Shown here: piece by piece, positions 13,001-53,239 of the stretch | Layout: each line of letters opens with the position of its first letter | Numbering within the stretch: the first letter of the stretch is position 1 | Assembly (NCBI RefSeq): GCF_033153115.1 | Contig: NW_026889757.1 | Span: 4,092,001-4,156,000, forward strand | Direction of reading: 5' to 3' | Length of the DNA: 64,000 nucleotides | Source of the DNA: Saccostrea echinata | Taxonomy: Eukaryota | Made by a program: the position numbers and the translations under genes | The notes under the pieces: model-generated | What the model was told of the DNA's origin: nothing | The model's input: only the letters and a program-made list of their open reading frames with translations | The model's database searches: none

Positions 13001-14738
13001 ACTTAGAGTACCCGTATCGAAGCAATTGAGATTTTCTTTATCCCCAAACAATCTGATAAGGGGGAAATTGTGGGCCAAAACCTACACATGTCACTCATTT
13101 CAGTGAAAAATACCTACTAAGACTGATACCACATATCCCTCCAATTGATTGCGATTTCTTTCAAAGGACGCAACGTCACGGTTTAATCAAGTTCTGAATA
13201 TTTAAAGTCTGCACAGTTGAAGTATCTCTTTAACATGCTTAGTAACAGTAAGACAAGGAACTTTGCCATGCGAGAGAGCAGTTGTGAAAATGTGCTGATT
13301 GAAAGGAAATAATTCATTTGGAATTATAAAAGTTTTTTTTTTTTTTAATGTGACTTAAATGTGATAAGGCATTTGTGACCAAATCATGGCTTATTTTTGG
13401 AGTAAGCGACCGTATTATCAAAAAGACTATGAAGACTTTGGTTTGCCAGGGATTAATGAAGTAAACATGTTATTAAAGTTTATGAAGTATATGCATTTAA
13501 ATTTTTTTTTGCAATTAGCCAATTTACTAGCATACTTTTACGTTTTCTATTTTTTTTTCAGATAAACTACAAGACTGCAAACAAATTTTCAGAACACAAT
13601 AATAGACACGCATTTCAAGATCATGGCGTCTATTTTGGCAATGTAAGTACCTAAATACGAGAAAAAAATCGTTGAAGAAAGTAAACATAATACAGAAAAA
13701 CAATCAATTTTCATTGATCTCATTAAAATGATTGGTTCATTGAAATCGTTCATACCCCCAGATCATGCAACAGGACTCAATGTTTATATCAGAATGAAAT
13801 TTTAAACTTGTTGATGCATTATTTTTATTCAGTGAACCATTTCAAAGGTTGAAAAACAATCGTGGAGTAATAAAGGCGACTGATTCAGTTATACGAGAAA
13901 ATAAAATCGTCATAAAGATTATCTCTCGTTGTATTGTCAAGACATTTAACTATTTACAAATTGTGAGGTTTTGTTAGAGTTGTGAATTTTTTATGTGGCC
14001 ATTCAAGTTTCTAAAATAACATTTGTTTTACATCTTATACTTTTAAACAAGCATTTTTGTCCGGCTTTATGTTAGAATTAGAACATTTCTGTATATATTC
14101 AATACATTTGTTTTAGTTACTATTGAAACGATATATTCAGTACAGAATATATTCATAATACATGTACCAGTATTTAAGCCTTTTTTTTTAAAATGAAAAG
14201 ATGCTTCGGAATGACAATAAAGACTCCTTTTTGTAACAATTGCACTGCAATGTGCATTCTACGATTTTCAAATATTTGGTGTTTTATTTCAAAGGGGAAG
14301 GATGAAAGAACACTGGGTCGTAAAATAACCCTGCCCGAACTTCGTCTACATCACACAGAGAAGACGTTTTTAAAGCACCATTCCAGAAACCCCGTGGACG
14401 CTGATTTAAACACAAACTATAGGGTATCATACCTCGGCCAACCCACCGAAAATCCGCCAGCTCACCGGCGATTTGCCCGGAAGTACAGAGCTCCGGAAAC
14501 CGGAAGTATTAAATTACAAACATCCACAACTGATTGGCATAAGTCCCCGGATGTTCCGTACAGAACGCCAACTCACGTGTTAGCCGTATCACAGGAACCA
14601 TTTCCTAAGCATAATCCGTGGAAATACTCCAACCATGGCATGAGAGACATTTATCCCCCTTATGAGAGGAGCACCAAACCCCTAGTGAATAACCAATTTA
14701 ACAAATATGGCGCTGCTTTTGCGGCTGCAAGTGAATGA
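7072..14738 (+). CDS. TEX36: Testis-expressed protein 36 homologue (HDNR-motif family), 4 coding exons, ~238 aa
   Basis: Exons 7072-7122 (MARGRQFAPSPASDGKW), 9573-9713 (FVHRG...PPPPFRSKTE), 13562-13642 (INYKTANKFSEHNNRHAFQDHGVYFGN) and 14295-14738 (GKDERTLGRK...HRRFARKY...AAASE*). All introns are GT-AG, phase 0, and the frame stays open. It matches recalled vertebrate TEX36 motifs: GRRFxPxxxxDGRWF, FSxHDNRH, LGRK, RRFPRxY. Confidence 0.85.
8600..8891. mobile_element. Poly-C MITE (hAT5-like)
   Basis: Termini catggccgtagga...tcctacgggcctg; flanks AGAAT / TGAAT (4 of 5 match). Confidence 0.55.
9816..9984. mobile_element. Fully palindromic MITE with 7-bp TSD (P/hAT-like CA..TG ends) in a TEX36 intron
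   Basis: cataggagttcgcaattttatc...gataaaattgcgaactcctgtg, with the centre at 9900. GTTGGAG at 9809-9815 and 9985-9991. Confidence 0.8.
10925..11095 (+). mobile_element. 3'-terminal fragment of a Penelope-like retroelement
   Basis: Carries the same cacggcgggtgtg.ccggtcgacaggggatgctta...cacctgatcccacctctg motif that follows the RT fragments at 40.5-41.3, 42.7-43.4 and 49.1-50.2 kb. Confidence 0.65.
12631..12776. other. Assembly gap
   Basis: Run of N. Confidence 1.
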
Positions 14739-44053: not shown

Positions 44054-46297
44054 TCACACTTGAAAAATAAAAATTTTCCCAGTCTGTGTACCTATCCAAA
44101 GTCTATTCTTGACATCACATGCAAGTGACCAGCAATCATCAATGTCAACTATCTTTTTGTCGAAGCGACCATTAGCAGTTAGTCTCCAAACCGAGTTTGA
44201 ACCATTATTTACGACATAGATCCGGCCCTTGGAATCACAACAAATGCCACGTGGTATAAATTCCGACTCTTCCATGCACTCCGGGGCTTCGCCATCAAAA
44301 GAATTCAACTGGTTCCCTTCAAAGTCTGTCAATACCACCTGAAGAGTAATCCAGTCCGACACTACAAACCAGCTCTCTTCTGCGTTTAAGGCAATTCGAG
44401 CTGGATACTGTATAGTGTTTCTCCCCATTACTTTCTTTTCTGTCTTCATGTTTTGCATCTTGACCATCGATGCTGATGGGTTTTCACTGCAGTTATAAAA
44501 CACGTCTTTTTCGGTTAAGCCCACAGTGAGTGTGTTGCTATTCCTGTCAAAAGTCATACCACGGGCACAACATTTGGTACGCAGAAAGGTTTCTGGCTCG
44601 GTATCACCCTCTTTCTTTACAACCATTTTTCTTGCATTACAAGATAGATAAACAGTTCCTTTTCCATCATAAGCGATGTCATCTAGTTTATAATCAGTGA
44701 CAAAAGTGTCATGACATTTGCCTTTTACATCGTATAATTTTGCCACTCCTTCATTTCCCATACATATCCATGCTTTGTCGTCTTCCACACAAGAAATCCC
44801 CGTTATCACGGTATCCTCCATTTCACAATCAAACCATTTTACAAGTCTTATCTCTTCAACGCCTTCCTTCTCCTCTGGAATTGAAATGAATCCAAACAGA
44901 TCTCTAACTTTCTCCTTCATCAAGAACCCCTTTACAAAGTCAATATTTGTATTGTCCTTCGCAGGTGGTTTAGCTGTAGAATTTTTCACTTTTTCCAACA
45001 TTTCAGTCAGTTTTGTGCCGTGAATAATGATATCTATATCGTTTCCTTGTTCTAAAAGCATAGTTGAAAATTCATAGAGCCCTAAATACTGCAACTTGAT
45101 TTTTTCTACATTCTTCATAGCACTGTTGTCAGGAGAGTATTCCAATACCTTACTGGAACATTCATCTTGAATATCATCGACTAATCTGTGAAAAAGTTGT
45201 GCTTGTTCCCTTATATTATCGAGAAGTTTTTCCTCAGTATCTAGCATCTTGTTTTTTTCTTTCTTTGCTTTAGCTTTTTCGTTGGACAACTTTTCAATAA
45301 AGTCACGATGTTCCGAATTTTCAGTTGCACTTTCAAGGGAATTTCGAAACTCAATAACTGCCTCGGATATATCCTTACACTCATGACTCTTATGCATTGT
45401 CATGTTGCAGTCGATGCAGATTGGTTGTTTACAAGTTACACAAAAATATTTCAACTCCTGCGTAGTATGATGATCACATAAAGAAACACTTTGTGATATC
45501 ATTCTGTCTCCCTTTTCACTAATGGTTACAATTCTATGACTCTTAGTTCCTTGTAGTTTGGAATGTACCCGAAGACAAAATGAGCAGTAATTCTGATCAC
45601 ATACGAAACAGTAAAATTCAGCTCTCGTTTTTTCTCCGCAAACATCACACTTTAAAATCGCATTTCCATCCTTGTTGAAAAAGAAGAAATTTTTGGGAAA
45701 GCCCTCTTCTTTATTCTGAGGAATTTTACTTACAGCTCCACAAACAGTACACTCATAACTTGAAAATATACCTTTCGCCTCAATCTGGTATTTCAAGCAT
45801 TCTTTGCAGAAGGAATGATAGCACTCCAGTAACCTTGGATCTTTAAAAGTTTCGTAACAAAGTGAGCATTTAAGTGTGTTTGGGTCCTTCGCCTTTCGAC
45901 TTACGTTTTCTCCATTGTCTTTTTTTCCTCTGCTTTCTCCACTTCCCCTTCCTGTCCTGCTATCCTTTCTCCCTTTATTTTCCCTATTATCATTTTTCCC
46001 TCTGCTTTCAACACTATCCTCTCCTACTCTGCTGACTTTTTCTCCTTCGTTTCCCCCATTGTCATTTTTCTTTTTGCTTTCACCACTGTCCTTTCCTGTT
46101 CTACTGTTCATTTCACCTTCACTTTCCCCATTGCCATTTCTCCCTCTGCTTTCAACACTATCCTTTCCTTGTCTGCCGTCTCTTCCTTGCTCTTTTTCCC
46201 CATTGTCTTTTGTTTTTGTAATTTCTCCATTGTCCTTCCCTTCTTTATTTTCATCGTTGTCCACGGTATTTTCCGTTCTAACACCCAAGCTTGCCAT
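44054..46297 (-). CDS. TRIM-family E3 ligase: RING, two B-boxes, coiled coil, NHL-like beta-propeller; intronless, ~747 aa
   Basis: RING CSLC..LECYHSFCKEC..CTVC; B-box1 CDVC..CFVCDQNYCSFC..H..H; B-box2 CDHH..YFCVTCKQPICIDC..H..H; NHL-like YPARIAL and FIPRGICCDSKGRIYVV. The first ATG is at 46297, right after a candidate acceptor (ttcag|GATGG). AATAAA on the minus strand at 43788-93. Confidence 0.9.
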   Translation of the reverse strand: MASLGVRTENTVDNDENKEGKDNGEITKTKDNGEKEQGRDGRQGKDSVESRGRNGNGESEGEMNSRTGKDSGESKKKNDNGGNEGEKVSRVGEDSVESRGKNDNRENKGRKDSRTGRGSGESRGKKDNGENVSRKAKDPNTLKCSLCYETFKDPRLLECYHSFCKECLKYQIEAKGIFSSYECTVCGAVSKIPQNKEEGFPKNFFFFNKDGNAILKCDVCGEKTRAEFYCFVCDQNYCSFCLRVHSKLQGTKSHRIVTISEKGDRMISQSVSLCDHHTTQELKYFCVTCKQPICIDCNMTMHKSHECKDISEAVIEFRNSLESATENSEHRDFIEKLSNEKAKAKKEKNKMLDTEEKLLDNIREQAQLFHRLVDDIQDECSSKVLEYSPDNSAMKNVEKIKLQYLGLYEFSTMLLEQGNDIDIIIHGTKLTEMLEKVKNSTAKPPAKDNTNIDFVKGFLMKEKVRDLFGFISIPEEKEGVEEIRLVKWFDCEMEDTVITGISCVEDDKAWICMGNEGVAKLYDVKGKCHDTFVTDYKLDDIAYDGKGTVYLSCNARKMVVKKEGDTEPETFLRTKCCARGMTFDRNSNTLTVGLTEKDVFYNCSENPSASMVKMQNMKTEKKVMGRNTIQYPARIALNAEESWFVVSDWITLQVVLTDFEGNQLNSFDGEAPECMEESEFIPRGICCDSKGRIYVVNNGSNSVWRLTANGRFDKKIVDIDDCWSLACDVKNRLWIGTQTGKIFIFQV

Positions 46298-48194
46298 CCT
46301 GAACGGATATATCACCACTCAGAAAAGCTTTTAGTATTAACAAAGTAAATTGACTCTCCTTTGATTGATTTTTCAGATGCAAAACAGAGCATTTTCAATC
46401 CACATCTTCTTGTCTTGAACTCACAGATACATTACGCAGCATTAAACTTACAATGTATGTCCGCTGTATTATGTAAAGGAAAAGTTTAGAATTGAACAAT
46501 TTCTCTCGATAGCACTAAAAATGCTGATGTAAATACTACAGTTGGCAACGAAATCAAACTCATTACCTCGTGGCAGTTTTGTTATGCATCCTTTATGAGC
46601 GTCAGATAGTTTTTCATCTGCCATGAATTATTAATCACTCTTATCTTTTAGATGTTGCAAATTATTCTGTGATCCGATAAATCCCAAAATGACAATCTCG
46701 ATGCGTGACATCTCTCTTTATCCCAGGTGAATATAGGATCTTTTTCTCCTCCTTCCTATCTCCTTACTCAAATCACAAGCTCACTTATTTTATTGCATAT
46801 TTCTAGTCACCACGCACTGTTGTCAGTAGACTGTGGAAAAAGGAGTTTTGTTTCGATAATCATTTCATATTCCGAACTGTATCTGTGTCATGGAGTAAAG
46901 CCTATCAATTACTTGTCATCAAATATGTATCCTTTGAAAGATTAGTCTTCTTTCAATCAATATCAAATTCAATATCGTTTTCACACCTTCAATATTATTG
47001 CTTCAAACGCTTTTATAATGCATTAAATCACAAATATGAGAGGGGGCATATTCCAGTACATATACAAAAGTCCATATGTCTATGATTCCTTAAATCGTCG
47101 AAAACATCATTCACACAGCAATGCGTAGATAAAAGTGTTAACCGAAACGTTGATATAAAAGTATGTACGCTCGTAGAACGATTAAATTATATTTTATTTT
47201 TTATTTTATTTTATTTTATTTTTTTTATTTTTTAAATAATTCAAACTCAGAGTCGTAGTACGATCATAAAAGATGAATGGACCAAATGAATGATATAAAT
47301 AAAATGAAATGAATCCTGTTTGTAAATAAACTAAAATGTTTTTTAGACTTATAGTGGTAGTTCATAAACATAACCCTCAATTTTTCCTCAACAATGATTG
47401 AAAGGACTAAATATTTTTTTAACACACACTACTTCATGAAAACTGTTGACCCAAAACTTAACCGGATAGGGTAGGGTGGGTAGGGGTGGTGGTGGTTTAA
47501 GAAAAGAATTATTTAATAGAATATAGAATTATATATATTTCAAACTTTGATCACTTGAGCTTTGGGCTGAGAGAAAGATAAAATCAAAGGTAAACTGGTC
47601 ATTAGTGATCATTGATTTAAAAAAAAAGTCTGAGATATATATTTTTTGTTAAGGCTACTCAATTATTTATAATTATGAGTTTTTCTAACAACAGGGTTTC
47701 CAAAACAAATTTTGTGTGGTCTTATCAGACACACCCAAATTGTTTTGTCTGGCTACTTATTCTGTATTGTGAGATGTTTACAAAATTTCTACATATTATT
47801 ATGAAATAGATTTCAAATGCATATAAAATCATGACATGGGAAGAAAAAAATGCAATTGCATAACTAGTTGTGAATTTGTGATTTTTTTCAACTATGAATG
47901 TTATGCACAAATTTTACAAATTACAAATACTGGACACAGTTTATTATGACCTCAATATGTTTATTTCATTTTGTAAATTTTAAATTTACCAGGAGGTTGC
48001 AATATCAAAATTTTGAAATTTTGAATTTACTGCAACGCGGTCAATTAAAAACTCACAATTATGCAAAGTATTTTTTCTTTGGTCATAAATTACTTTTACC
48101 ACGCAAACGTTTTTTTCTGCATTTTATACAAAAAATTGAAATGTTTGGTTCTTTTACCATAGATGTACTAATTGTTGGGCCATTATTTACACAT

Positions 48195-50225: not shown

Positions 50226-50522
50226 TTTTTTTCTTGTTTGCTTAACACCCTTCGCTAATTTTTCACTCATATTGAAAATCCATTACTTGCTGCTGGAGGG
50301 CTGCAAATTCAGACTTGTACTCGGCTTTTACGGCCTTTGAGCAGTGAGGGATCTTTTTCGTGCAAGCACCTACTGCGACACGGGACCTCGTTTATACGGT
50401 CTCATTCGAAGGACTGGCCTCCACGTCCTGCAGTGGGATTCGGACCCGCAACATAAGGATTAATTCCTCACTCCACAAATCAAGAGCAAACGCTATAACC
50501 ACTACATAGGCCACGCAGCGAC
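50226..50522 (-). mobile_element. Deu/Nin-like tRNA SINE, diverged full-length copy
   Basis: Co-linear with 17785-18072. Confidence 0.8.
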
Positions 50523-50901
50523 TAAGGCTTTTTAAAAAACATTTAGTAGAACACGCTATGAATCTCTATTTATAAAGATTTTTATGTAATTTAGGAATCA
50601 GTATAGGTATAGTAATTCAAATATTCAATTTGGTTGATATGAATATTAAAAATATTTAAAACTGACGTATGATTTTGAAAATTTTCCTCCTTAGAAAGGG
50701 AACTATGAGTATAAGTTGGAAGTGAAAAAAAGACACATTATTACAAAACATTTTTTAAAAAATTTCATTTATTTTGTTATGTACACAAATTAATGTAACA
50801 AAATACATTTTAGGAGGTTTAAAAAAAAAGAATGTTACTTATAGCACGCAATTTTGTATAAATATTTATAAATAATATGATGAAATATAAAGAAAAAAAT
50901 A

Positions 50902-52890
50902 TCAAATAATATCTAGCTCTGCACCTTTGTTAACACATTCAGAATCTTCAAATGATCTGTAAATTCCCGGAGTGTGTGCTGCGCCAGTAGCAATTTCGAC
51001 ATTTGTTTTGTAAAAATGGCGTTCTACCTCTTTTTTCAGAGGAAGTGACGTTACACCAGTATAAAGGGGTAGGAAAAATAATGTGGTAAACATGACTAAC
51101 AATAATAAAGCTTGTTCCACAAATAATGCAATGATTATGCTACAAATAACAGCAAAAACTGAATATCCCCAAAGATGTTTTAGACTGGATATGAAGCAAT
51201 TGGACGCTCTAAATTCGTCTTCTACTGCCCTCTGCGGGATCCATTTAACATTAGCACCAAGGTTCGCTTGTACTGCTTTCACAAATCTAACACAACCCAC
51301 TATTGCTTCTGGTGTGAATTGTAAAATAGAAGCGATAGTTTCAATAATGACATATTTGTAGTTCTTCTTATTACACGTTGCAAATTTTGGGAATACAAGA
51401 ACTAGAAACATTACAATGATGATAGAAGCATATCTGTATCGGAGATGTACGCTGATGTGAATAAGAACGTAAAAAAGTAAGAATGGTTTCATCATCATCT
51501 GTCTGAGAGCAGCATAGGCAATGAAACTGCTCACAAAATCGAGATGAGACTCGGTACGAAGTTTTGTAGGGTTAAACTTATCTCCTTTCATCTGCCTTTG
51601 AATCCATCTCATAAGCCTCCCTACGGCATTCTTCCAGAAGTACATCGCTAAAAGCACTTCTCCTCGATTCCAGCGTCTTTCTCGAATGTTCCATGTAACG
51701 AAATTAAATGAGGGTGCTTCTAGGAGATACGCCGAACCCGCATATAAAGGTTGTAATAATGCTGCCTCGAAAGTGTCATGACTCAAAACATCGACAGGAA
51801 CTCGCTCTATTAAATTATCTCTTGTCCCAATCACTCTTTCAATATATATTTTATTTTTTATCATTGCCTTCCCAAAGTAAGCTGATTGACCAAGCAAAGC
51901 CATCACTGCATTTGTCATTGGTTCATAAATAGACTGTCTCATTGCTTCTATGTGCATAAAAATTGTGTCTGTGTCATTGCAATACAGTTTGATGGCAGGC
52001 TGTATGATTCCTCGCTCAGGATTCGCTGCAGCGATGGACAATAACTCATAAACACACCCATCTGGTACACCAGTATCACCGTCTAACACTAAAGTATAGT
52101 CAAATTTTCTTCCAAAAATGTTATTCACGTCTTCTGAATCGTGAAATAGAGGCTCTGAGTACGGTCTAGCATCCCTGCCATAAAATTCTCTGTCACAGTA
52201 TGTGAAAGCTAAGTCATCCCCTTCCGAAAGGAGCATCAGGTCCTGGTACTGTCCACACTTGCGTAATACGCGACTGACACGATGTATAACCATAAATTCA
52301 CGCGCAAATCGATCACAAATATCATGCAAGTACTCTGTAATAAATACAGATTTCTCCACATCATCGTATAATTTCCACAAATGTTCCAAATGTGCAGGAT
52401 TGATTGAATCAAAATCCTCTTCAGCAAAAGATACCCCTTCCTGGAATAAATGATCATATATGAGGGATCTGTATTTTTGTACTACTTCTATTTCGTAGTC
52501 TTTAAGTTCTTGTGCACCAGTTGCACTAACAAGCACAGCTGAGACATTAGGACTCAGGTTCCCCATGAAAGCTTGGAACATATTATCCAAACAATCGTCA
52601 ATTTCATCTTTACTGAGCGCAAGAAGATTGTAGTTCAAAAGAATGGTAAACCTGTCACACTTGGCTCTTTGTGGGTCTCGAGTTTCTCCACCTATTAATA
52701 ATGTAGCCACAGTTTGCATGGGGAATTCCATCACGCTTCCCTGTAAAACACCCAATACTACAATGATGAAGATGGCGTTTATGTAGTTGGTTTTGGTCCA
52801 ATCCACGTTCAACACGTTTAATAAGATGGCGATAAAGGCAAGTAAAATCCAAATCCCAAAGAATATAAACACTCTCTTGTTTCTATTCAT
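50902..52890 (-). CDS. Membrane-bound processive GT2 glycosyltransferase, OpgH/MdoH- and Cgs-like (putative beta-1,2-glucan synthase), ~662 aa, intronless CDS
   Basis: Uninterrupted ~2-kb ORF with two N-terminal TM helices, a cytoplasmic GT-A domain (RKCG, DYTLVLDGDT, NPERGIIQP, YFGKAMI, VLSHDTFEAALL, RERRWNRG) and several C-terminal TM helices. ATG in AAAAACATG context. Acceptor ttttcag at 52925-27, candidate upstream donor G|GTAAGA at 54489, AATAAA on the minus strand at 50768-73. Confidence 0.88.
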   Translation of the reverse strand: MNRNKRVFIFFGIWILLAFIAILLNVLNVDWTKTNYINAIFIIVVLGVLQGSVMEFPMQTVATLLIGGETRDPQRAKCDRFTILLNYNLLALSKDEIDDCLDNMFQAFMGNLSPNVSAVLVSATGAQELKDYEIEVVQKYRSLIYDHLFQEGVSFAEEDFDSINPAHLEHLWKLYDDVEKSVFITEYLHDICDRFAREFMVIHRVSRVLRKCGQYQDLMLLSEGDDLAFTYCDREFYGRDARPYSEPLFHDSEDVNNIFGRKFDYTLVLDGDTGVPDGCVYELLSIAAANPERGIIQPAIKLYCNDTDTIFMHIEAMRQSIYEPMTNAVMALLGQSAYFGKAMIKNKIYIERVIGTRDNLIERVPVDVLSHDTFEAALLQPLYAGSAYLLEAPSFNFVTWNIRERRWNRGEVLLAMYFWKNAVGRLMRWIQRQMKGDKFNPTKLRTESHLDFVSSFIAYAALRQMMMKPFLLFYVLIHISVHLRYRYASIIIVMFLVLVFPKFATCNKKNYKYVIIETIASILQFTPEAIVGCVRFVKAVQANLGANVKWIPQRAVEDEFRASNCFISSLKHLWGYSVFAVICSIIIALFVEQALLLLVMFTTLFFLPLYTGVTSLPLKKEVERHFYKTNVEIATGAAHTPGIYRSFEDSECVNKGAELDII

Positions 52891-53239
52891 GTTTTTTAAA
52901 TAACTTCTTCCAATTCCAAACAACCTGAAAATGAAAGGAAGGAATTTACAAAGAACGGCAAAGAATCATACATTAAATAGCTCTCGATAATGCCAAACTG
53001 CAATTCCTGATCTCTTTTTCAAGTTTTTCGTTAGTTATCAGAATCAACCAAACTTTGGCTGAGAAGGAAAAAAAGTTTGTGTCAATGTATTTCTCTGTCG
53101 AAAAATAGTTTCGGAAAATATTTTTAATACTCAAGTTGCCTTGTAAATTTTAGAAATATAATAAAGAATGATGAATATTAAAAATTCATGTAATTGCACA
53201 TGACTAGATCTCATGAAAAAAGTGACCCCCCCTTACTTG

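What the first reader, a model, noticed from the sequence alone, without database searches (positions are those of the whole stretch)
50902..52890. Bacterial-type beta-1,2-glucan synthase (OpgH/Cgs-like) gene embedded in an animal genome
Seen: an intact 662-aa ORF with the layout 2 TM / GT-A domain / multi-TM. Its motifs, in order, are RKCG..QDL, DYTLVLDGDT, NPERGIIQP, LGQSAYFGK, VLSHDTFEAALL, EAPS and RERRWNRG. Established: the SHD catalytic motif with RxRRWxxG is the signature of osmoregulated periplasmic glucan synthase OpgH (RKAGN, VLDADS, NPxAGIIQ, ILSHDFVEAALM, RDRRWCxGN) and of the related domain in cyclic beta-1,2-glucan synthase Cgs/NdvB (RKRG, TLDADT, GILQP, GKG, LLSHD, RWxRGD). Animal chitin and hyaluronan synthases use GEDR/GDDR and QRRRW/QQTRW instead. 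Beta-1,2-glucan synthesis is not an established animal pathway. Inference: a horizontally acquired (or patchily retained) polysaccharide synthase giving a mollusc a novel glucan. Plausible roles are salinity adaptation (bacterial OPGs are osmoregulated), mucus or shell matrix, or microbe interaction.
Basis: partly seen in the sequence, partly recalled or inferred. Interest (0 to 1): 0.92.

Follow-up and report, generated by a model that had tools for sequence, protein, structure and literature searches.

The report
Oyster OpgH/Cgs-like membrane sugar-polymer synthase
An oyster chromosome carries an intact, strongly conserved gene for a membrane sugar-polymer synthase whose only characterised relatives are the bacterial beta-1,2-glucan synthases OpgH and Cgs; it is an old family shared by molluscs, hemichordates, a ribbon worm, dinoflagellates and giant viruses, and nobody knows what it makes.

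Summary
It sits 4.1 Mb into a contig of a 923 Mb Saccostrea genome, is single-copy, and has host-like GC, animal neighbour genes and a host dispersed repeat beside it.

The OpgH/Cgs kinship is real but distant:
- NCBIfam MdoH models: E 4e-12, far below cutoff.
- hhalign against E. coli OpgH: 97.8%, E 1e-12. The BcsA control finds nothing.
- AF2 model (pLDDT 87): the best fold match is Cgs (Z 23.4), against BcsA at 17.7.
- The catalytic residues D, DxD, SHD and RxRW are invariant in 93 homologues.

The "bacterial gene in an animal" framing is only partly right. Orthologues occur across bivalves, gastropods and cephalopods with a species-like tree, and also in hemichordates and a nemertean. The nearest non-animal relatives are dinoflagellate transcripts (44-51% identity; 1 to at least 5 tandem synthase modules fused to ABC-transporter domains). 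Marine giant viruses follow at about 31%. Bacterial relatives (about 25%) are rare multidomain giants. The direction of transfer is unresolved (AU p=0.37).

The product is untested. OpgG, GH94 and GH144 partners are absent. No expression data could be obtained. NCBI already names some members "OpgH-like", and I found no paper on them.

The parts
50902..52890 (-). Complete coding sequence in one exon: 662 codons plus the TGA stop at 50904-50902
   Evidence: open frame of 687 codons, no internal stops. Orthologues have the same length and N-terminus: S. cucullata 662 aa, M. gigas 664 aa.
52693..52884 (-). N-terminal pair of transmembrane helices (residues 3-66)
   Evidence: AF2 helices 3-28 and 36-66; hydropathy peaks at 9-27 and 36-54.
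51706..52653 (-). Cytosolic GT-A catalytic domain (residues about 80-395), including a family-specific helical insert at about 127-196
   Evidence: AF2 alpha/beta pattern. Fold matches to the Cgs GT domain, BcsA and HAS. OpgH and Cgs sequence matches over residues 255-418.
52240..52266 (-). LRKCGQYQD signature (residues 209-217). D217 is the inferred first UDP-binding aspartate.
   Evidence: D217 is invariant in 93/93 rows. KxGQYQD is shared by the animal, dinoflagellate, giant-virus and bacterial multidomain members but not by E. coli OpgH. The equivalence to Cgs D527 is inferred from PMC10901819.
52075..52083 (-). DxD motif (D270-G-D272)
   Evidence: D270 is in 93/93 rows and D272 in 92/93. 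It aligns with Cgs D624/D626 (PMC10901819) and with OpgH VLDADS.
51775..51783 (-). SHD motif (S370-H371-D372). D372 is the inferred catalytic base.
   Evidence: S and H are in 93/93 rows and D in 92/93. It aligns with Cgs LSHD, where D739 is the catalytic base (PMC10901819), and with OpgH LSHD.
51670..51684 (-). RERRW motif (residues 403-407), the family's version of the QxxRW motif at the start of an interface helix
   Evidence: R406 is in 93/93 rows and W407 in 92/93. It aligns with Cgs RQHRW (R773) and OpgH RDRRW.
51049..51702 (-). C-terminal interface and transmembrane helix bundle (residues 397-614), the presumed polymer path
   Evidence: AF2 helices at 397-418, 420-438, 452-480, 488-505, 511-544, 553-590 and 595-614. 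This region aligns with the Cgs and BcsA membrane parts.
50905..51027 (-). Disordered C-terminal tail (residues 622-662)
   Evidence: pLDDT below 50. The tail varies in length between species: 800-900 aa forms occur in Mya and Mercenaria.
52925..52965 (-). Splice-acceptor-like polypyrimidine tract ending in CAG (52927-52925), 34 nt upstream of the ATG. An in-frame TGA lies at 52968-52966. This suggests a 5'-UTR intron.
   Evidence: Read directly from the sequence. The intron is an inference, since no RNA data were available.
50768..50773 (-). AATAAA polyadenylation-signal-like hexamer, 129 nt after the stop codon
   Evidence: Read directly from the sequence. Its function is inferred.
50330..50560 (.). 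Copy of a high-copy dispersed repeat of the host genome, 340-570 bp downstream of the stop codon
   Evidence: 3285 first-look candidates. The 40 that were scored lie on many contigs at 83-90% identity.

Best explanation
The ORF is a functional oyster nuclear gene, inherited vertically within Mollusca. It encodes a membrane-embedded, probably processive, inverting GT2-type polysaccharide synthase. It belongs to a distinct clade shared by eukaryotes and giant viruses, whose only characterised relatives are the two bacterial beta-1,2-glucan synthases OpgH and Cgs. Proposed mechanism (inferred): the cytosolic GT-A domain binds a UDP-sugar, most likely UDP-glucose, through D217 and D270xD272 with a divalent cation. 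D372 of the SHD motif deprotonates the acceptor hydroxyl. R406/W407 of RERRW position the diphosphate and the chain end at the membrane interface. The growing chain passes through the bundle formed by the 2 N-terminal and about 6 C-terminal helices, to the outside of the cell or into a secretory compartment. My sub-probabilities: functional enzyme 0.9; polymer-forming membrane synthase 0.8; glucose donor 0.6; beta-1,2 linkage about 0.4. Origin: the gene was present before bivalves, gastropods and cephalopods diverged. The family was exchanged between marine animals, dinoflagellates and giant viruses at least once, in a direction that these data do not resolve. There is no sign of a recent bacterial donor.
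For: The ORF is intact and single-copy inside a large host contig. Its neighbours are animal genes: a TRIM-like protein, a Ras GTPase and an HDNR-domain protein. The gene has host-like GC, 38.7% against 33.5% for the window, compared with 22-26% in the viral copies, 43-55% in the dinoflagellate-type copies and 60-63% in the bacterial copies. A host dispersed repeat lies 340 bp downstream, and acceptor-like and AATAAA signals flank the ORF. Orthologues at 59-98% identity occur in more than 25 mollusc species on chromosome-scale contigs, at 49-52% in three hemichordates and in the nemertean Tubulanus. The tree within molluscs resembles the species tree: Saccostrea+Magallana 100*, then Pinctada and Mizuhopecten, with gastropods together at 99*. 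Catalytic residues are invariant over 93 rows. Sequence kinship: 8 NCBIfam MdoH models, best E 4e-12; hhalign against E. coli OpgH gives 97.8%, E 1.3e-12 and 30% identity over 160 columns, while the BcsA control gives 0.2%; the family profile hits only Cgs in the PDB. Fold: the AF2 model has pLDDT 86.7 and pTM 0.85; Foldseek ranks Cgs first at E 9e-16, TMq 0.59, then BcsA 0.46, HAS 0.43 and chitin synthase 0.26; VIA-align gives Cgs Z 23.4 with 511 residues at 3.3 A, and BcsA Z 17.7. Relatives: dinoflagellate transcripts (EukProt Gymnodinium smaydae and MMETSP) at 44-51% identity over the full length; GVMAG giant-virus contigs with fused TopoII, Hsp70 and NAD-ligase neighbours; rare bacterial multidomain proteins.
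Against: The protein scores below the curated cutoffs of every library family (Pfam PF13632 12 bits against 27; MdoH 45 bits against 419), so the family assignment rests on remote homology and a predicted structure. Donor sugar and linkage cannot be read from sequence. The OpgH partner OpgG and the Cgs accessory domains GH94 and GH144 were not detected in the genome, and the Cgs priming tyrosine is not conserved, so the bacterial pathways are not reproduced. Fusion of the dinoflagellate homologues to ABC-exporter modules could mean the synthase module does not translocate its own product. The vertical-inheritance claim rests on protein trees only; I did not examine orthologue DNA or synteny.
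Confidence: 0.75

Rival explanations
1. The enzyme class is right but the polymer is different. The family makes some other glycan (for example a beta-1,3, beta-1,4 or beta-1,6 glucan, a mannan, or a lipid- or protein-linked oligosaccharide), not a beta-1,2-glucan.
For: The clade is separated from OpgH by a very long branch (7.7 substitutions per site), and only about 160 of 662 residues align with OpgH. OpgG, GH94 and GH144 partners are absent. GT2 specificity is known to change over much shorter distances (general knowledge).
Against: The only two characterised families that use an SHD catalytic motif with RxRW in this arrangement both make beta-1,2-glucan (PMC10901819, PMC11842490). They are the top hits by sequence and by fold, while BcsA is undetectable by sequence.
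Confidence: 0.4
2. Origin by horizontal transfer among marine eukaryotes, possibly carried by giant viruses. Molluscs, hemichordates and nemerteans, or an early ancestor of some of them, acquired the gene from a protist or a giant virus, or dinoflagellates acquired it from an animal.
For: The gene was found in only three animal phyla among named hits. The dinoflagellate clade groups with molluscs to the exclusion of hemichordates (98*, 97*). Giant-virus copies exist. The nemertean copy branched away from the other animals in the 93-row tree. The coding sequence is intronless in the oyster.
Against: The AU test does not reject a single animal clade (delta lnL 5.2, p 0.37). The giant-virus clade is not nested next to animals, and compositional bias affects those rows. 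No donor lineage was identified.
Confidence: 0.5
3. Origin by ancient vertical descent. The gene was present in the bilaterian (or an older eukaryotic) ancestor and was lost many times.
For: It is present in both Lophotrochozoa and Ambulacraria. Animal monophyly is not rejected. Several old paralogue lineages exist inside molluscs.
Against: This would require loss in most animal phyla, since named hits come only from molluscs, hemichordates and one nemertean. Identity between oyster and dinoflagellate (44-51%) is as high as between oyster and hemichordate (49-52%).
Confidence: 0.3
4. Recent bacterial transfer into the oyster, or bacterial contamination of the assembly.
For: The ORF is intronless, and its best named library matches are bacterial MdoH models.
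Against: The gene is 4.1 Mb inside a host contig and single-copy, with host GC, host repeats and animal neighbour genes. Orthologues occur in independent assemblies of many molluscs. The best prokaryotic relatives among 185,579 species genomes are about 25% identical.
Confidence: 0.02
5. A catalytically inactive or purely regulatory membrane protein, by analogy with the cell-size moonlighting role of OpgH.
For: I have no direct activity data.
Against: Every catalytic residue is invariant across more than 500 My and 93 sequences. The OpgH N-terminal cytoplasmic domain that carries the moonlighting role is absent, because the protein starts with a TM helix at residue 3.
Confidence: 0.03

Closest known systems
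OpgH / MdoH (E. coli b1049), the GT2 synthase of the linear beta-1,2 backbone of osmoregulated periplasmic glucans
   Same: It is the closest characterised family by sequence: 8 NCBIfam MdoH models hit (best E 4e-12), and hhalign gives 97.8%, E 1.3e-12 and 30% identity over the catalytic core. The motifs VLDxD, GIIQ, LSHD..EAA and RxRRW..G are shared. The TM - GT - TM layout is shared.
   Different: The protein scores 45 bits against equivalog cutoffs of 328-1131. Only about 160 residues align. It lacks the roughly 130-aa N-terminal cytoplasmic domain. It has the KxGQYQD signature and a helical insert that OpgH lacks. There is no OpgG/OpgD in the genome. The host is a eukaryote.
[quoted passage not shown]
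   Same: It is the best structural match by two methods (Foldseek E 9e-16, TMq 0.59; VIA-align Z 23.4, 511 residues, 3.3 A). It is the only solved structure reached by the family profile. DxD, SHD and RW align with Cgs D624/D626, D739 and R773 (PMC10901819).
   Different: Cgs is about 2,800 aa, with NTD, GH144-like cyclase and GH94 phosphorylase domains, a Tyr694 glucan primer on an unwound IF1 loop, and no export channel. The oyster protein is 662 aa with none of these domains. The IF1 region is predicted to be helical (310-333), and the tyrosine is not conserved (35 of 93 rows).
BcsA, plant CesA and hyaluronan synthases (processive membrane GT2 synthase-translocases)
   Same: The overall fold and membrane-embedded architecture are shared (Z 14-18). 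The D, DxD, catalytic D and xRW logic is the same.
   Different: No sequence similarity is detectable (hhalign against BcsA gives 0.2%). The catalytic motif is SHD, not TED or GDD. There is no PilZ domain.
Chlorovirus hyaluronan and chitin synthases (virus-encoded membrane GT2 enzymes shared with animals)
   Same: The distribution pattern is similar: a membrane polysaccharide synthase found in some animals, some protists and large DNA viruses of protists. The analogy comes from general knowledge.
   Different: It is a different GT2 lineage. The viral copies here lie on mimivirus-like metagenomic contigs of unknown host, and no product is known.

Membership tests
OpgH/MdoH (NCBIfam equivalogs PRK05454.x) | Whole-protein score above the curated equivalog cutoff | tested here: not met
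   The best model, NF003958, gives 45.1 bits against a cutoff of 419. All 8 models that hit are far below their cutoffs.
OpgH/MdoH (NCBIfam equivalogs PRK05454.x) | Catalytic motifs D, DxD, (S)HD and RxRW in the GT core | tested here: met
   The motifs align with E. coli OpgH residues 332-501. The residues are invariant in 93 rows that include OpgH.
OpgH/MdoH (NCBIfam equivalogs PRK05454.x) | Genomic partner OpgG/OpgD (MdoG, PF04349), required for OPG synthesis | tested here: not met
   There is no match in the 923 Mb genome in six frames, and the E. coli control was positive. Exon fragmentation could hide a weak homologue.
OpgH/MdoH (NCBIfam equivalogs PRK05454.x) | N-terminal cytoplasmic domain before the first TM helix | tested here: not met
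   The first TM helix begins at residue 3.
OpgH/MdoH (NCBIfam equivalogs PRK05454.x) | Makes linear beta-1,2-glucan from UDP-glucose | not testable with these tools
   This needs biochemistry.
[quoted passage not shown] | GT84-type modified GT2 fold with flanking TM helices | tested here: met
   Cgs is the top hit by Foldseek and by VIA-align, with a clear margin over BcsA. The comparison uses a predicted model.
[quoted passage not shown] | Multidomain architecture with a GH144-like cyclase and a GH94 phosphorylase | tested here: not met
   The protein is 662 aa with no extra domain. PF17167 and PF10091 are not found anywhere in the genome.
[quoted passage not shown] | Tyr694 O-glucan primer on the IF1-homology loop | tested here: not met
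   The nearest tyrosine (Y322) is present in only 35 of 93 family rows, and the region is predicted to be helical. The residue equivalence is approximate.
Pfam Glyco_trans_2_3 (PF13632), general GT2 group | Score above the gathering threshold | tested here: not met
   The oyster protein scores 12.3 bits against 27. Several giant-virus and bacterial members do carry precomputed PF13632 hits.
Animal chitin synthase / hyaluronan synthase | Closest fold or sequence match, with EDR/GDD and QRRRW/QxxRW motifs | tested here: not met
   Chitin synthases give TMq 0.25-0.27 and Z 11-12.5; HAS gives TMq 0.43 and Z 16.5, below Cgs. No sequence hit was found. The motif is SHD with RERRW.

The most novel reading that the evidence does not exclude
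Molluscs, hemichordates and nemerteans make a previously unknown glucan, possibly the first animal beta-1,2-glucan. They would do so with a synthase family that has moved between marine invertebrates, dinoflagellates (where 1 to at least 5 synthase modules are strung together and fused to an ABC exporter) and giant viruses. This would parallel the hyaluronan synthase story of vertebrates and chloroviruses.
Probability: 0.35. Interest if true: 0.85.

Novelty: new variant of a known kind. Interest (0 to 1): 0.7.

Why it matters
Beta-1,2-glucans are regarded as rare, essentially bacterial polymers. The enzymes that make them (OpgH, Cgs) matter for osmoadaptation, symbiosis and virulence.

A strongly conserved relative in three marine animal phyla points to an uncharacterised glycan pathway in animals. 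These include commercially important oysters, scallops, abalone and octopus.

The same family in dinoflagellates, as tandem multi-synthase ABC fusions, and in giant viruses points to a widely used but unstudied marine polysaccharide system. It also gives a concrete case for studying gene exchange between viruses, protists and animals.

The question can be tested directly by expression and product analysis. Database pipelines already label some members "OpgH-like", so the similarity itself is not new. What appears undescribed is the clade structure, its relatives and its distinctness from true OpgH.

Tried and rejected
- Tandem paralogue: the other long ORF (44054-46318, minus strand) is an unrelated TRIM-like RING/B-box/NHL protein.
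- Contaminant or recent bacterial transfer: rejected.
- Single-sequence PDB search: only noise. The profile search was needed.
I used IMG/VR and metagenome scans instead.
No expression claim is made.
- Dinoflagellate spliced-leader core in the fetched loci: no match, so this test was uninformative.
- Dinoflagellates nested inside animals: the trees suggested it, but the AU test does not reject animal monophyly (p 0.37), so I do not claim a direction of transfer.
- ABC-transporter partner or Mya-type C-terminal extension in the window: none by tblastn.
- Cgs-like tyrosine primer: not conserved.
- OpgG, GH94 and GH144 in the genome: none found.
- Identity of lineage P0098 and of the short 'S' group: not resolved.
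- tRNA-like stretch downstream of the gene: not a tRNA; it is a dispersed repeat.
- Literature: no paper links OpgH/MdoH-like genes to molluscs, animals, dinoflagellates or giant viruses. The supplement of the metazoan HGT compendium is not held. One search was a badly framed search.
Full report
**The observation.** The window holds one long open frame on the minus strand, 50902..52923. From the first ATG (52890) it encodes 662 aa, ending at TGA 50904-50902. Only two ORFs above 600 aa exist in this 64 kb window of 33% GC DNA. The other (44054-46318, minus strand) is an unrelated TRIM-like RING/B-box/NHL protein.

**Is it really in an animal genome?** Yes.
- The window is G000:C8:4092001-4156000 of a 923 Mb, 425-contig assembly, and the gene is single-copy there.
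- The protein is 98% identical to a Saccostrea cucullata protein and about 90% identical to the Magallana gigas protein XP_011437382.2.
- Neighbouring ORFs are typical animal genes: a TRIM-like protein, a Ras-family GTPase and an HDNR-domain protein.
- The gene's GC is 38.7% against 33.5% for the window, which is host-like. The viral copies are 22-26%, the dinoflagellate-type copies 43-55% and the bacterial copies 60-63%.
- A dispersed repeat with more than 3,000 candidate copies in this genome lies 340-570 bp past the stop codon.
- On the coding strand, a polypyrimidine tract ending in CAG lies 34 nt upstream of the ATG. An in-frame TGA lies further upstream, and an AATAAA lies 129 nt after the stop. 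These signals suggest a eukaryotic transcription unit with a 5'-UTR intron. That is an inference from sequence only.

**What the protein is.** No library family is matched above threshold.
- Pfam gives only Glyco_trans_2_3 at 12 bits against a cutoff of 27.
- Eight NCBIfam OpgH/MdoH equivalog models hit residues about 255-413 significantly (best E 4.2e-12), but at 45 bits against cutoffs of 328-1131.
- A 31-sequence family profile (A1) aligned with E. coli OpgH by hhalign gives 97.8% probability, E 1.3e-12 and 30% identity over 160 columns (query 256-418 against OpgH 332-501).
- The same profile against E. coli cellulose synthase BcsA finds nothing (0.2%).
[quoted passage not shown] The alignment puts DxD on Cgs D624/D626, SHD on the catalytic base D739, and RERRW on R773 (residue roles from PMC10901819).

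**Structure.**
- The AlphaFold2 model is confident: pLDDT 86.7 and pTM 0.85, with only the tail 622-662 disordered.
- Foldseek ranks Cgs first (E 9e-16, TMq 0.59). BcsA follows at 0.46, hyaluronan synthase at 0.43 and chitin synthases at about 0.26.
- An independent all-against-representatives search gives Cgs Z 23.4 (511 residues, 3.3 A), BcsA Z 17.7 and HAS Z 16.5.
- Language-model features also place bacterial OpgH clusters nearest among named families.
- No OpgH structure is in the PDB copy searched.

**It is not an OpgH or a Cgs.**
- It fails the equivalog cutoffs.
- It lacks the N-terminal cytoplasmic domain of OpgH; the first TM helix starts at residue 3.
- The genome has no detectable OpgG/MdoG.
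- The genome has no detectable GH94 or GH144-type domain of Cgs. The controls were positive in all three searches.
- The Cgs priming tyrosine Y694 has no conserved counterpart: Tyr occurs in 35 of 93 rows. The corresponding IF1 region is predicted helical, as in BcsA, and not an unwound loop as in Cgs (PMC10901819).
- The family has its own KxGQYQD signature, which E. coli OpgH lacks.

**Who else has it.** An exhaustive phmmer search of 1.84 billion representatives returns only 197 hits at E<=1e-3. Classical OpgH is not among them, so this is a compact, well-separated family.
- Animals. Named members come from bivalves, gastropods and cephalopods (59-98% identity), three hemichordates (49-52%) and the nemertean Tubulanus polymorphus. 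Most are on chromosome-scale contigs.
- Dinoflagellates. The nearest non-animal relatives are dinoflagellate transcripts (EukProt Gymnodinium smaydae and an MMETSP transcript) and many marine metatranscriptome-like contigs. They are 44-51% identical over the whole 620-aa module. In them the module lies between a roughly 700-aa N-terminal region and ABC-transporter membrane and ATPase domains. It is repeated head to tail from 1 to at least 5 times in one open frame.
- Giant viruses. The next tier (about 30-33% identity, stand-alone 600-650 aa, very AT-rich) lies on giant-virus metagenomic genomes (IMG/VR GVMAG contigs). Their neighbours include a fused topoisomerase II, Hsp70, an NAD-dependent ligase and another GT2.
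- Bacteria. In 185,579 prokaryotic species genomes only two loci were found, an Elusimicrobia MAG and an Omnitrophota MAG. Both are about 25% identical and embedded in proteins of 1,832 and at least 1,304 aa. In a sample of 151 genomes of that phylum, 2 carry it.

**Phylogeny.**
- The 93-row ML tree (647 columns, LG+C20 PMSF, SH-aLRT) was rooted on E. coli OpgH, which has a 7.7 substitutions-per-site branch. The bacterial multidomain clade (99*) and a giant-virus-plus-anonymous clade lie outside a eukaryotic group (97*). In that group hemichordates (99*) are sister (96*) to a clade (98*) of mollusc lineages plus a 100* clade that holds all dinoflagellate-type sequences.
- Within molluscs the window protein groups with S. 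cucullata (98*), then M. gigas (100*), then Pinctada and Mizuhopecten. Gastropods form one clade (99*). Several old mollusc paralogue lineages exist. This pattern indicates vertical inheritance since before the mollusc classes split.
- A 48-row tree without the longest branches again joins molluscs with the dinoflagellate clade (97*).
- However, an AU test shows that forcing all 22 animal rows into one clade costs only 5.2 lnL units (p 0.37).
- So animals and the dinoflagellate clade are each other's closest known relatives, but neither the direction nor the number of transfers is resolved. The AT-rich viral rows violate compositional homogeneity, so their position should be read cautiously.

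**How it most likely works.**
- Shown: D217, D270, G340, S370, H371, R406 and G410 are invariant in all 93 rows. D272, K341, D372 and W407 are kept in 92 of 93. The fold is that of a membrane-embedded GT2 synthase.
- Inferred from the Cgs and BcsA structures: D217 and the DxD motif bind UDP-sugar and metal. D372 is the catalytic base. RERRW sits on the interface helix that holds the acceptor end. The chain leaves through the helical bundle.
- Weak hints: the helical IF1 and eight-helix bundle suggest a self-translocating enzyme like OpgH or BcsA. The ABC fusion in dinoflagellates echoes the Cgs plus Cgt-exporter arrangement and points the other way.
- Donor and linkage are guesses. The only characterised enzymes with the SHD and RxRW arrangement both make beta-1,2-glucan from UDP-glucose. 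I therefore put glucose at about 0.6 and the beta-1,2 linkage at about 0.4.

**Novelty.** NCBI and UniProt pipelines already name some members "glucans biosynthesis glucosyltransferase H(-like)", so the resemblance is on record. I found no paper that discusses such genes in animals, dinoflagellates or giant viruses. The following appear to be undescribed:
- the distinct clade and its failure of the OpgH and Cgs membership tests;
- the dinoflagellate tandem-module ABC fusions;
- the giant-virus copies;
- the age of the gene in molluscs.

**Limits.**
- No orthologue DNA was available, so I could not compute dN/dS. Constraint is inferred from intact ORFs and from 59-98% protein identity across molluscs.

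Noticed in passing
L017:1-11159, L022:1-11031, L018:1-12015; proteins P0121-P0123: In dinoflagellate-type marine transcripts the complete ~620-aa synthase module (TM helices plus GT) is repeated head to tail 2 to at least 5 times in one open frame (at least 3,666 aa in L017). A ~700-aa N-terminal region precedes the repeats, and ABC-transporter membrane and ATPase domains follow. This looks like a polyprotein-like or multi-synthase exporter fusion.
   Followed up: partly
L009:10001-11803, L010, L011:2800-4749, L012, L013 (IMG/VR GVMAG contigs): Giant-virus metagenomic genomes (22-26% GC) encode stand-alone members of the family. The neighbours include a fused topoisomerase II, Hsp70 and an NAD-dependent DNA ligase. 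A second GT2 gene lies nearby (L009:18340-19584).
   Followed up: partly
P0138 (Tubulanus polymorphus LOC141905500, on a 24.9 Mb contig): A nemertean carries a divergent copy. In the 93-row tree it did not group with molluscs or hemichordates (long branch). It was not included in the AU test.
   Followed up: no
P0098 / P0325 (ENA contigs of 202-241 kb): This deep-branching eukaryote-like member is about 49% identical to the mollusc proteins. The organism is unidentified, and no closer relative was found.
   Followed up: partly
L003:3802-9279 (Elusimicrobia MAG), L002 (Omnitrophota MAG), G126:C1:525852-527480: The bacterial relatives are embedded in very large proteins (1,832, at least 1,304 and 3,390-aa open frames). 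Their other regions match no Pfam family.
   Followed up: partly
window 44054-46318 (-): A single-exon 754-aa ORF encodes a TRIM-like protein (RING, two B-boxes, NHL/SGL beta-propeller), a type that is expanded in bivalves.
   Followed up: partly
window 29766-30311 (+) and 14193-14738 (+): There is an intronless 181-aa Ras-family GTPase ORF (Pfam Ras, E 1e-56) and a 181-aa ORF with an HDNR domain.
   Followed up: no
window 50330-50560: This is a high-copy dispersed repeat of the host genome (3,285 first-look candidates; scored copies at 83-90% identity on many contigs), just downstream of the gene. ARAGORN does not call it a tRNA.
   Followed up: partly
P0020, P0022, P0033 (Mya, Mercenaria, Mactra) and L020, L021: Heterodont bivalve orthologues are 880-905 aa, with a ~230-aa C-terminal extension that oysters lack. 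Two marine metagenome contigs (35-37% GC) carry near-identical forms, presumably from mollusc DNA in the sample.
   Followed up: no
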